A DNA stretch of 62,912 bases, filler included, from Octopus bimaculoides (lineage: Eukaryota), in NCBI RefSeq assembly GCF_001194135.2. It is 8 parts of 6 records of this genome, joined end to end, with 100 filler letters (N's around TTAATTAATTAA, not from the genome) between each part and the next. Parts side by side here need not be neighbours in the genome. Positions count along the whole stretch, not along the records: positions 24,064 to 51,128 come from NC_068987.1; 7 more parts are not named here. One strand, given 5' to 3'. The notes under the pieces are model-generated. The model worked only from the letters and a program-made list of their open reading frames with translations, did not search any database and was not told the origin of the DNA. Both the position numbers and the translations under genes were made by a program. Shown here in pieces: positions 33,181 through 33,717 of the stretch (positions are counted from its first letter, which is position 1; the number at the start of each line of letters is the position of its first letter).

Positions 33181-33717
33181 AAATTAATATAAATAGCAGT
33201 TTGCAATGTTTCACCAAAAAGGAGAATGACAAATGTCACTATGTGCGACTAGGAAACACCTGCATTGCTAGAAATAAGAGCTAAAGCGTTCTAATGCTAT
33301 AGTTAACGCACATGAATGAAAACATATACATTAACAGAGGCCATAATCGTCCGAGAAGTGCCGAACGAGAATTCTTAATACTGACTCATCAGTTTCGACA
33401 ATTACCGTTACCTCATCAGTTAAGACTGCTCGAATTCGGTTTTTTCAGGAGTCGCTTCACCTGTAGAATTTATGTTTTCGTCATCCAAATAATTGGATGA
33501 TTTAGCGATTCGCGAATATGGATATATAAAATTAATATAAACACTAGTTTCCAATGTTTCGCCAAAAAGGAGAATTACAAGTGTTACTAAATGCTACTAA
33601 TGTGTAAGGAAACACATACATTGCTAGAAATAAGAGCTAAAATGCTCTAATACTGTAGTTAACGCACATGAATGAAAATATATTCACTAACAGGGACCAT
33701 AATCGTCCGAGAACTGC
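33181..33717 (-). repeat. ~350-bp 1.5-mer tandem repeat carrying a hammerhead ribozyme (retrozyme-like)
   Basis: 33181-33360 is homologous to 33529-33717 (anchor offsets 348-356 bp). The ribozyme lies between the two matching blocks. Confidence 0.75.
33361..33439 (-). ncRNA. Type I hammerhead ribozyme
   Basis: Minus strand: CCGAA-UU-CGAG-CAG-UCUUAA, CUGAUGA, GGUAA(CGGUAA)UUGUC, GAA, A-CUGA(UGAG)UCAG-U, A, UUAAGA-AUU-CUCG-UUCGG. All core nucleotides are present. GUA triplet, with cleavage predicted between 33379 and 33378. Confidence 0.88.

What the first reader, a model, noticed from the sequence alone, without database searches (positions are those of the whole stretch)
33361..33439. Canonical, apparently intact type I hammerhead ribozyme on the minus strand
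Seen directly: the CUGAUGA and GAA core, the G10.1-C11.1 pair, a 5-bp stem II (two G-U pairs) with a 6-nt loop, stem III ACUGA/UCAGU with a UGAG loop, a GUA cleavage triplet, and a 6-bp stem I. Stem I extends through a 3x3 internal loop (CAG/AUU) into CGAG/CUCG and CCGAA/UUCGG. Established knowledge: in natural type I hammerheads such as Schistosoma Sm-alpha, a stem I internal loop docks on loop II and gives fast cleavage. Inference: this is a full-size self-cleaving RNA rather than the minimal motif usual in Penelope pLTRs. I am not aware of this family being described in cephalopods, but could not check. Stem III itself contains a second CUGAUGAG.
Basis: partly seen in the sequence, partly recalled or inferred. 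Interest (0 to 1): 0.88.

Follow-up and report, generated by a model that had tools for sequence, protein, structure and literature searches.

The report
Hammerhead ribozyme in a retrozyme-like repeat
The motif is a real, complete type I hammerhead (self-cutting RNA) motif, and it sits in an old, partial copy of a small ribozyme-carrying mobile repeat ("retrozyme") of a kind already known in many animals, so it is a new example of a known kind.

Summary
The predicted cleavage site lies between 33379 and 33378. A structural descriptor finds this motif once in the 27-kb piece; equally good motifs appeared in 0 of 1000 shuffles. A covariance model trained only on four experimentally studied retrozyme hammerheads ranks it second in the piece (20.4 bits, E about 7e-4). 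Rfam's own models miss it at their curated scores.

The ribozyme spans the unit junction of a 356-nt, 35% GC, non-coding repeat. The locus holds 1.5 direct units, an abutting inverted 5'-truncated fragment and a flanking microsatellite. This matches Penelope-type insertion architecture and metazoan non-LTR retrozymes.

A second, unrelated hammerhead-like motif (37175-37240, + strand; 33.2 bits, E about 1e-7) sits in another partial tandem of 364-nt period.

Locus 1 has only one ribozyme, its helix II is weak, and its two copies differ by about 15%. It is therefore probably a relic that cannot release circles itself. Activity, copy number and host could not be tested. Verdict: real feature, new member of a known kind, modest interest.

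The parts
33361..33439 (-). Extended type I hammerhead (HHR1): helix I with a 3x3 internal loop and distal helices, catalytic core, helices II and III
   Evidence: Read directly. Descriptor hit with helices of 6/5/5 bp, 0/1000 shuffles as good. Model R1 gives 20.4 bits, E=6.7e-4 for 33373-33425.
33413..33419 (-). Core box CUGAUGA (C3-A9)
33397..33412 (-). Helix II GGUAA/UUGUC (1 G-C, 2 G-U, 2 A-U) with 6-nt loop CGGUAA. This is the weak element.
   Evidence: Isolated hairpin is +3.2 kcal/mol.
33394..33396 (-). Core G12 A13 A14
33380..33393 (-). Helix III hairpin ACUGA-UGAG-UCAGU. Its 5' half repeats the 9-mer ACUGAUGAG of the core.
   Evidence: Hairpin is -2.8 kcal/mol. In the MFE fold its 3' strand pairs with the first ACUGA instead.
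33378..33379 (-). Predicted scissile bond: A17 (33379) | U1.1 (33378), triplet GUA
33362..33717 (-). One full 356-nt period of the repeat (copy A plus the single-copy segment that ends in HHR1). 35% GC, non-coding.
   Evidence: Direct repeat spacing of 356 (D20). Alignments. Circular fold and GC. No ORF over 65 aa and no Pfam hit nearby.
33179..33361 (-). Partial second unit (copy B), 87% identical to copy A and cut off at the microsatellite. It carries 14 nt (33365-33352) between two TTCTCG repeats that copy A lacks.
33717..33877 (+). Inverted, 5'-truncated fragment of the same unit (unit positions 114-283, 79% identity). It is head-to-head with copy A and stops just before the ribozyme.
33113..33179 (.). 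(TA)n(TG)n microsatellite abutting the 3' end of copy B
37175..37240 (+). Second, unrelated hammerhead-like motif (HHR2). Helix I UUGCUCUA/UGGAGUGA. Core CUGAUGA 37183-37189. Helix II UGCUU/AGGCA, with U-A instead of G-C at 10.1/11.1. GAA 37204-37206. Long imperfect helix III. GUA with A17 = 37232.
   Evidence: Relaxed descriptor. 0/600 shuffles as good. Model R1 gives 33.2 bits, E=1.2e-7. Energies.
36993..37105 (+). Upstream arm of the direct repeat flanking HHR2 (period about 364 nt)
   Evidence: BLAST 74% over 82 nt, E=1.5e-7. Local alignment score 79 against a shuffle maximum of 47.
37357..37468 (+). Downstream arm of the direct repeat flanking HHR2
24240..24268 (+). Possible scrap of the locus-1 family. 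The 8 nt just 5' of the extended ribozyme are joined to the 19 nt just 3' of it (18/19), with the ribozyme domain absent. Marginal evidence.

Best explanation
Locus 1 is an old, partial insertion of a small non-coding, non-autonomous retroelement of the metazoan 'non-LTR retrozyme' kind. These elements are thought to be mobilised by Penelope-like elements.

In the source elements, about 356-nt units lie head to tail, and each unit junction forms a type I hammerhead. Helix I is made from the end of one unit and the start of the next.

Proposed mechanism:
1. Transcription gives a multimeric RNA.
2. Each hammerhead folds and cuts after the GUA (here between 33379 and 33378). This leaves a 2',3'-cyclic phosphate and a 5'-OH.
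3. Unit-length RNA is released and, by analogy with other animals, is circularised by the RtcB-type ligase.
4. The RNA is reverse-transcribed by a Penelope-like reverse transcriptase/GIY-YIG endonuclease at microsatellite-like targets.
5. This yields permuted partial tandems with an inverted 5'-truncated copy, which is the structure seen here.

Shown here: the motif, its significance, the 356-nt period, the permuted direct and inverted fragments, the low GC content, the absence of coding capacity, and a second locus of the same architecture.

Inferred: cleavage, circularisation, the mobilising enzyme, and multicopy status.

This copy has a single ribozyme. It could at most cut a read-through transcript once, and it is most likely a decaying relic.
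For: 1. The motif is complete and non-random. It meets the published descriptor CUGANGA / GAAAY / RUH with perfect helices (legend of Supplementary Figure S1 of PMC7229834).
2. A model trained only on validated retrozyme hammerheads picks HHR2 and HHR1 as the two top hits of the 27-kb piece. They score 33.2 and 20.4 bits; the next hit scores 9.1.
3. HHR1 spans the junction of a direct repeat with a 356-nt period.
4. The sequence crosses unit positions 356|1 in the direct copy. It crosses 195|196 in both the direct copy and the inverted fragment. The template was therefore multimeric or circular, not a linear element with fixed ends.
5. A head-to-head inverted 5'-truncated fragment, a partial tandem and a flanking (TA)n(TG)n tract match the Penelope-type insertion structure and microsatellite bias described in PMC8557442.
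6. Unit size, 35% GC and circular folding energy (-77.1 kcal/mol) are almost the same as for the validated mussel retrozyme Mg353 (353 nt, 37% GC, -75.2 kcal/mol). They lie within the published 150-450 bp and under 45-50% GC ranges.
7. A second, unrelated hammerhead in a 364-nt partial tandem lies 3.3 kb away.
8. On the more parsimonious alignment, the 5' end of the direct copy coincides with the predicted cleavage site: GTG|TTAAG in copy A against GTA|TTAAG in copy B. This alignment needs a 14-nt slippage deletion between two TTCTCG repeats.
Against: - There are only 1.5 units and one ribozyme. This fails the criterion for an active retrozyme: at least 2 consecutive units, each with a complete HHR (Li et al. 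2026).
- No other copy was recovered from any collection I could search, so multicopy status is unproven.
- No Penelope RT or GIY-YIG domain occurs in the piece.
- Rfam models do not reach gathering scores.
- Helix II is thermodynamically unstable. The MFE fold sequesters the core.
- The copy A boundary is ambiguous, because TTAAG can also be assigned to the inverted fragment.
- The inverted fragment is more diverged (79%) than copy B (87%), so it may be a separate event.
- No target-site duplication was seen.
Confidence: 0.75

Rival explanations
1. Chance occurrence of a hammerhead-like pattern in AT-rich junk DNA, with no ribozyme ancestry.
For: The hammerhead has only about 13 fixed nucleotides. 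Rfam models give sub-threshold scores. A relaxed descriptor (3/2/1 bp) hits 0.25 times per shuffle.
Against: A motif this good appeared in 0/1000 shuffles. The independent model gives E=6.7e-4. The motif sits exactly at a repeat-unit junction. The only other good motif in the piece also sits in a partial tandem of about 360-nt period.
Confidence: 0.03
2. The hammerhead belongs to the pseudo-LTR of an autonomous Penelope-like element. The rest of that element lies here in degraded form.
For: The partial tandem, inverted 5'-truncated copy and microsatellite flank are Penelope hallmarks. Type I hammerheads occur in pLTRs.
Against: There is no RT or GIY-YIG signal within the locus or its flanks. 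The only RVT_1 hit is an RT relic 13 kb away, read by eye as LINE-like. The repeat period is 356 nt, not kilobases. The motif is full-size (helix III of 5 bp), not the minimal dimer-dependent pLTR type.
Confidence: 0.1
3. A Sm-alpha-type SINE: a pol III-transcribed, tRNA-derived short element that carries a hammerhead.
For: Similar size (about 335 nt for Sm-alpha, from my own knowledge). Both carry a type I hammerhead with a helix I internal loop.
Against: ARAGORN finds no tRNA-like sequence in the piece. The best A-box and B-box matches in the unit each have at least 3 mismatches of 11. There is no A-rich tail. The fragments are circularly permuted, which a linear SINE would not produce.
Confidence: 0.05
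4. A domesticated, host-functional ribozyme, for example one processing a host transcript, kept intact by selection at this locus.
For: The core is fully intact although the flanking repeat copies differ by K2P 0.146.
Against: Under neutral decay the chance that 13-15 core sites stay untouched is 0.33-0.39, so intactness needs no selection. Two G-U pairs weaken helix II, as expected from decay. No gene, exon or conserved protein domain is nearby.
Confidence: 0.05

Closest known systems
Metazoan non-LTR retrozymes (Cervera & de la Pena 2020, PMC7229834), especially the Mytilus galloprovincialis repeats of 350-390 bp
   Same: Type I hammerhead with canonical helix sizes and a 6-bp helix I. Unit of 356 nt against 353. 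GC of 35% against 37%. Circular MFE of -77 against -75 kcal/mol. Non-coding. The hammerhead is formed across the unit junction. The hammerhead fold is not the nearest-neighbour MFE in either case.
   Different: No sequence homology outside the core. Only 1.5 units and one ribozyme here, against dimers to large multimers. Helix II is 5 bp with a 6-nt loop and two G-U pairs. Expression and circles are not shown.
Penelope-like element insertions and their pLTR hammerheads (PMC8557442; Li et al. 2026 bioRxiv 10.64898/2026.07.22.740005)
   Same: Partial tandem, adjacent inverted 5'-truncated copy, microsatellite at the flank, and a type I hammerhead in the repeated non-coding part.
   Different: No RT/GIY-YIG ORF. 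The unit is ten times shorter. The hammerhead is full-size rather than minimal.
Schistosoma Sm-alpha and newt/salamander satellite hammerheads
   Same: Type I topology. Helix I internal loop opposite a hairpin loop on helix II. Carried by short repeats of about 330-350 nt. The axolotl HHR_Amex2 uses the same GUA triplet, and HHR2 shares CUGAUGAUGC...GAAACACGUGU with it.
   Different: No tRNA-like or pol III features. The loop sequences differ, and the conserved tertiary-contact nucleotides could not be checked.
Rfam hammerhead families (Hammerhead_1, Hammerhead_3, HH9, HH10, RAGATH-1-hammerhead)
   Same: Same catalytic core and three-helix junction.
   Different: Scores of 23 and 14.8 bits against gathering scores of 48.5 and 56.3. 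No Hammerhead_1, HH9 or HH10 match was listed.

Membership tests
Hammerhead ribozyme, type I | Conserved core CUGANGA ... GAAA(Y) ... (R)UH | tested here: met
   CUGAUGA 33419-33413, GAAAC 33396-33392, GUA 33381-33379. The descriptor wording comes from the PMC7229834 supplement.
Hammerhead ribozyme, type I | Three helices around the core, helix I open-ended, helices II and III closed by loops, G10.1-C11.1 and A15.1-U16.1 pairs | tested here: met
   Helices of 6/5/5 bp with G10.1-C11.1 and A15.1-U16.1 present. HHR2 has U-A at 10.1/11.1.
Hammerhead ribozyme, type I | Reaches the curated score of an Rfam hammerhead covariance model | tested here: not met
   0 hits at gathering. Best sub-threshold scores are 23 bits (Hammerhead_3, permuted register) and 14.8 bits (RAGATH-1).
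Hammerhead ribozyme, type I | Recognised by a profile of experimentally validated metazoan type I hammerheads | tested here: met
   Model R1 was built from coral, mussel and two axolotl ribozymes. HHR1 scores 20.4 bits (E=6.7e-4) and HHR2 scores 33.2 bits (E=1.2e-7). The next hit scores 9.1 bits. E-values are rough.
Hammerhead ribozyme, type I | Helix I internal loop and loop 2 placed to make the tertiary contact | tested here: inconclusive
   A 3x3 internal loop follows 6 bp of helix I, and three validated retrozyme ribozymes also have a 6-bp helix I. Helix II is 1 bp longer and loop 2 is 6 nt. The conserved contact nucleotides could not be checked without the figures or a 3D model.
Hammerhead ribozyme, type I | Site-specific self-cleavage | not testable with these tools
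   Thermodynamics only. The hammerhead fold is -13.8 against an MFE of -21.3 kcal/mol, a gap of 8.5. The gaps are 4.4, 7.6 and 3.6 for the coral, mussel and axolotl ribozymes studied in vitro.
Metazoan non-LTR retrozyme | Short repeat unit of 150-450 bp, GC below 45-50%, no LTR/PBS/PPT and no coding capacity | tested here: met
   356-nt period and 35% GC. The longest stop-free frame is 65 aa with no homologue. There are no Pfam hits around it.
Metazoan non-LTR retrozyme | At least two consecutive units, each with a complete hammerhead (criterion for an active element, Li et al. 2026) | tested here: not met
   1.5 units and one hammerhead. TRF does not call the array. Locus 2 also has one motif.
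Metazoan non-LTR retrozyme | Multicopy family in the host genome, co-occurring with Penelope-like elements | not testable with these tools
   No eukaryote genome collection is available. Scans of metagenomes, IMG/VR and GTDB gave only chance matches. Within the piece there are three fragments of family 1, a possible scrap and a second family.
Metazoan non-LTR retrozyme | Expressed as unit-length linear and circular RNA | not testable with these tools
   No transcript data. The circular fold z-score is -1.7, against -1.0 for the mussel Mg353 retrozyme.
Penelope-like element (autonomous) | ORF with reverse transcriptase and GIY-YIG endonuclease between the pLTRs | tested here: not met
   The only Pfam hit is RVT_1 in an RT relic at 46900-47154, read by eye as LINE-like. 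There is no GIY-YIG hit.
Penelope-like element (insertion architecture) | Partial tandem plus adjacent inverted 5'-truncated copy, with microsatellite target bias | tested here: met
   compared with Fig. 2 and the text of PMC8557442
Sm-alpha-type SINE | tRNA-derived head with pol III A and B boxes, and fixed termini | tested here: not met
   No tRNA-like sequence. Best box matches have at least 3 mismatches. The fragments are circularly permuted.

The most novel reading that the evidence does not exclude
The host genome (said to be a cephalopod, unverified) carries several unrelated, recently or currently active families of about 360-nt hammerhead retrozymes that make abundant small circular RNAs.

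In addition, locus 1 preserves a genomic footprint of the mechanism. Its direct copy begins at the predicted cleavage site, and it is joined by a 5-nt microhomology to an inverted fragment. This would show that a self-cleaved linear RNA was copied to its 5'-OH end and then resolved by a Penelope-type or twin-priming step. The duplicated ACUGAUGAG would act as a built-in off-switch that protects the circle from re-cleavage.
Probability: 0.2. Interest if true: 0.5.

Novelty: new member of a known kind. Interest (0 to 1): 0.3.

Why it matters
This locus adds a lineage-specific sequence family to the known class of animal hammerhead retrozymes, and the piece probably holds a second family.

- Two such loci within 27 kb suggest that these elements are common in this genome. 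If so, they matter for repeat annotation and for interpreting small circular RNAs in its transcriptomes.
- The permuted direct and inverted structure next to a microsatellite is sequence-level support for the proposed link between retrozymes and the Penelope integration machinery.
- It does not open a new kind of biology. The ribozyme, the element type and the insertion architecture are all described elsewhere.

Tried and rejected
- **Rfam.** The gathering scan of the whole piece gave nothing. E-value scans gave only sub-threshold hits.
- **Type III reading from Rfam's Hammerhead_3 alignment.** Rejected. Only 4 nt (UUAA) lie between the putative GUC and CUGAUGA, so there is no helix I.
- **Second CUGAUGAG as the core of an alternative ribozyme.** Rejected by eye. 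No helix II or GAA follows it.
- **A dominant alternative fold as a refutation.** Rejected as a criterion. The hammerhead folds of coral, mussel and axolotl retrozymes studied in vitro are also not the MFE.
- **Relatives elsewhere (DNA).** HHR-specific and unit-specific patterns found nothing in JGI metagenomes or IMG/VR. Three chance 19-20-mers turned up in metagenomes. GTDB genomes gave one chance match inside a bacterial coding region.
- **Relatives elsewhere (protein).** Pseudo-ORFs of the repeat and an RT-relic frame (LINE-like by eye) found nothing. A conserved RT-tail fragment found only relatives at 86% identity or less. One of them lies on a 458-kb ENA contig that shares no DNA similarity with the window and has no hammerhead. 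The host could therefore not be identified, and same-species DNA could not be sampled.
- **The search of protein representatives.** Not run, because the word-indexed search of the same data found no candidate.
- **Homology to the mussel retrozyme outside the core.** None.
- **Homology between the two units in the window.** None.
- **tRNA head and pol III boxes.** None.
- **Target-site duplication around the composite insertion.** None seen by eye.
- **Literature.** Only two papers in the library contain both 'hammerhead ribozyme' and 'cephalopod', and Craig et al. 2021 does not describe a cephalopod hammerhead. The second, on twister ribozymes, was not opened. The NAR 2020 supplement does not mention cephalopods. 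One broad search was uninformative.
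Full report
**1.

On the minus strand, 33439..33361 reads:

CCGAA-UU-CGAG-CAG-UCUUAA-CUGAUGA-GGUAA-CGGUAA-UUGUC-GAA-ACUGA-UGAG-UCAGU-A-UUAAGA-AUU-CUCG-UUCGG.

- All core positions are canonical: C3-A9 is CUGAUGA, G12-A14 is GAA, A15.1-U16.1 and G10.1-C11.1 pair, and H17 is A.
- Helices I, II and III have 6, 5 and 5 base pairs.

*Chance tests*
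- A descriptor I wrote (CUGANGA, G10.1-C11.1, GAAA, U16.1, H17, minimum helices 4/4/3) finds this site and no other in 24064-51128 on either strand.
- One of 1000 dinucleotide-preserving shuffles of the piece gave any hit. None gave one with helices of 6/5/5.
- The simple pattern CTGATGA..CGAAA..T matches only this locus.

**2. Family models**

- Rfam release 15 reports nothing at gathering scores in the piece.
- With permissive thresholds, the best match over 33200-33600 is Hammerhead_3 at 23 bits (gathering 48.5). It is in a permuted register that leaves no helix I, so it is not a valid reading.
- Restricted to 33366-33426, the best match is RAGATH-1-hammerhead at 14.8 bits, in the type I register.
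- I then built a covariance model from four hammerheads of retrozymes studied in vitro: coral Amil224, mussel Mg353 and axolotl Ax353 and Ax330. The sequences come from Supplementary Table 2 of PMC7229834.
- I searched the whole piece with filters off:

| Rank | Coordinates | Strand | Bits | E-value |
|---|---|---|---|---|
| 1 | 37177-37238 | + | 33.2 | 1.2e-7 |
| 2 | 33373-33425 | - | 20.4 | 6.7e-4 |
| 3 | 46021-46072 | - | 9.1 | 1.4 |

**3. Folding**

- RNAfold's minimum free energy structure of the 79-mer (-21.3 kcal/mol, z = -2.15) is not the hammerhead. The first ACUGA (A plus the core CUGA) pairs with UCAGU, the 3' strand of helix III. This is possible because ACUGAUGAG occurs twice.
- The hammerhead fold is -13.8 kcal/mol.
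- Helix II alone is +3.2 kcal/mol and helix III alone is -2.8 kcal/mol.
- In growing transcripts, helix III is part of the MFE at 60-64 nt, but helix II never is.
The free-energy gap between the hammerhead-constrained ensemble and the free ensemble is 8.5 kcal/mol here.
- The same gap is 4.4 for the coral ribozyme (kobs about 0.8/min), 7.6 for the mussel (about 0.1/min) and 3.6 for axolotl Ax353.
- Nearest-neighbour folding therefore does not discriminate active natural hammerheads, and the alternative fold does not refute activity.
- The weak helix II (one G-C, two G-U, two A-U) remains the main reason to doubt that this copy is efficient.

**4.

- The ribozyme lies at the junction of a direct repeat. 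33251-33366 and 33607-33722 are 87% identical with a spacing of 356 (D20).
- Alignments give the following on the minus strand:
  - one full 356-nt period, 33717->33362, whose last 79 nt are the ribozyme;
  - a partial second unit, 33361->33179 (87% identity over 183 ungapped columns, K2P 0.146);
  - the second unit ends at a (CA)n(TA)n microsatellite (33113-33179).
- A third fragment lies head-to-head against the start of the first unit. On the plus strand, 33717-33877 matches unit positions 114-283 at 79% identity. It stops exactly where the extended ribozyme begins.
- The direct copy reads through unit positions 356|1. Both the direct copy and the inverted fragment read through 195|196. The template therefore had no fixed ends; it was multimeric or circular.
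- The unit is 35% GC and non-coding. Its longest stop-free frame is 65 aa with no homologue.
- It has no tRNA-like head and no pol III boxes.
- No RT or GIY-YIG domain lies near it. The only Pfam hit in the piece is RVT_1 in an RT relic at 46900-47154, which I read by eye as LINE-like.

**5. A second locus**

- Relaxing the descriptor revealed one more motif, on the plus strand at 37175-37240:
  - helix I UUGCUCUA/UGGAGUGA (8 bp, three of them G-U);
  - core CUGAUGA at 37183-37189;
  - helix II UGCUU/AGGCA (-2.6 kcal/mol), with U-A instead of G-C at 10.1/11.1;
  - GAA at 37204-37206;
  - a long imperfect helix III, then GUA with A17 at 37232.
- No shuffle of 600 gave a motif as good. It is the top hit of my model.
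- It shares CUGAUGAUGC...GAAACACGUGU with the axolotl HHR_Amex2. An axolotl-like reading with a 2-bp helix III would leave three mismatches at the base of helix I.
- It also lies between direct repeats, 36993-37105 and 37357-37468. The period is about 364 nt and identity is 74% (BLAST E=1.5e-7; local alignment score 79 against a shuffle maximum of 47).
- The two units share no detectable homology.
- Two hammerhead motifs, each inside a partial tandem of about 360 nt, within 4 kb, make chance untenable. They suggest that such elements are frequent in this genome.

**6. What it is**

- These features match the metazoan non-LTR retrozymes of Cervera and de la Pena (PMC7229834). Those carry canonical type I hammerheads in tandem repeats of 150-450 bp with low GC. 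They lack LTR, PBS and PPT, and are expressed as self-cleaved linear and circular RNAs of 170-400 nt.
- In the mussel the repeats are 350-390 bp. The cloned Mg353 unit (353 nt, 37% GC, circular MFE -75.2 kcal/mol) is almost a twin in bulk properties of this unit (356 nt, 35% GC, -77.1 kcal/mol). There is no sequence homology outside the core.
- The insertion architecture is what Craig et al. describe for Penelope-like elements: a partial tandem, an adjacent inverted 5'-truncated copy and a microsatellite flank (PMC8557442).
- By that preprint's own criterion, an active retrozyme needs two consecutive units with complete hammerheads. Neither locus here qualifies.

**7. Mechanism, and what is shown versus inferred**

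*Shown*
- The motif and its statistical significance.
- The period, the circular permutation and the inverted fragment.
- The base composition and the lack of coding capacity.
- The second locus.

*Inferred from the literature on other animals*
- Multimeric transcripts self-cleave at each junction.
- Monomers are circularised by the tRNA ligase RtcB.
- A Penelope-type RT/endonuclease copies the RNA into microsatellite-like targets.

*A possible footprint of cleavage*
- Copy A begins GTG|TTAAGCAGTTCTCGG. The ribozyme junction reads GTA|TTAAGAATTCTCG[TTCGGCACTTCTCG]GACG.
- If the 14 bracketed nucleotides were lost by slippage between the two TTCTCG repeats, copy A starts at the cleavage site. 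The cDNA would then have run to the 5'-OH end of a self-cleaved RNA.
- The same TTAAG can be assigned to the inverted fragment (CTTAACAC against unit CTT-ACAC). The boundary is therefore ambiguous by up to 17 nt.

**8. Age and state**

- With K2P 0.146 between the two direct copies, each has taken roughly 7% substitutions.
- The chance that 13-15 core sites escaped is 0.33-0.39. An intact core therefore needs no selection.
- The two G-U pairs of helix II are what decay by transitions would produce.
- With one ribozyme, this locus could cut a read-through transcript once but cannot release a unit.
- I judge it a relic of a family whose active members, if any, lie elsewhere.

**9. Limits**

- No eukaryote genome collection was available.
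- Pattern scans of JGI metagenomes, IMG/VR and GTDB genomes gave nothing or chance matches.
- Protein-based routes to same-species DNA failed.
- In the paper library, 'hammerhead ribozyme' and 'cephalopod' co-occur in two papers. Craig et al. 2021 does not describe such an element; the second, on twister ribozymes, was not opened.
- Such repeats are reported from molluscs and many other phyla. A cephalopod family would be a new record, not a new kind.

**10. Verdict**

The interpretation needs to be widened from 'a ribozyme' to 'a retrozyme-type mobile repeat, here as an old partial insertion, with a second such locus nearby'. It is a new member of a known kind. Interest is 0.3.

Noticed in passing
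window 37175-37240 (+), with repeats 36993-37105 and 37357-37468: A second hammerhead-like motif of an unrelated sequence family, inside its own partial tandem of about 364-nt period. It is the top hit (33.2 bits) of a model trained on validated retrozyme hammerheads. It has U-A instead of G-C at 10.1/11.1.
   Followed up: yes
window 24240-24268 (+): GCGACTCC-A-CTCCTCGGACGATTATG joins the 8 nt just 5' of the extended ribozyme of locus 1 to the 19 nt just 3' of it (18/19). It looks like a family copy that lost the whole ribozyme domain. It lies next to an (ATT)n tract. The support is marginal: 2 of 300 shuffles score as well for the 19-mer.
   Followed up: partly
window 33420-33412 and 33393-33385 (-): The 9-mer ACUGAUGAG occurs twice in the ribozyme, so UCAGU can pair with either copy. 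The predicted MFE fold uses the first copy and buries the core. This could act as an off-state of the kind known in viroid-like RNAs, or it could be coincidence.
   Followed up: partly
window 32374-32630, 40421-40686, 50677-50743: An interspersed SINE-like repeat (90%, 81% and 73% identity) ending in GGTT(C/T)GGCAAA. It is unrelated to the retrozyme units.
   Followed up: no
window 45780-47154 (-); 26850-27000 and 29823-30797 (+); 45347-45664 (-): Decayed mobile-element coding relics. One is an RT with an RVT_1 hit at 46900-47154, LINE-like by eye. Fragments of a second RT family have relatives only at 86% identity or less in the protein collection. A mariner-like HTH fragment was recognised by eye only.
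   Followed up: partly
window 24064-51128 generally: The piece looks like a draft eukaryote assembly. It has many N gaps (for example around 31330-31400, 36040-36200, 42300-42370, 47800-48400 and 49600-50500). It has dense (TA)n, (CA)n, (TATG)n and (ATT)n microsatellites and 15-43% GC. The host could not be identified with the tools.
   Followed up: partly
L005 869-906 (GTDB MAG CAZZHO010000198.1): The only match to the hammerhead pattern in prokaryote genomes lies inside a bacterial protein-coding region and has no helix II. It is a chance match.
   Followed up: yes
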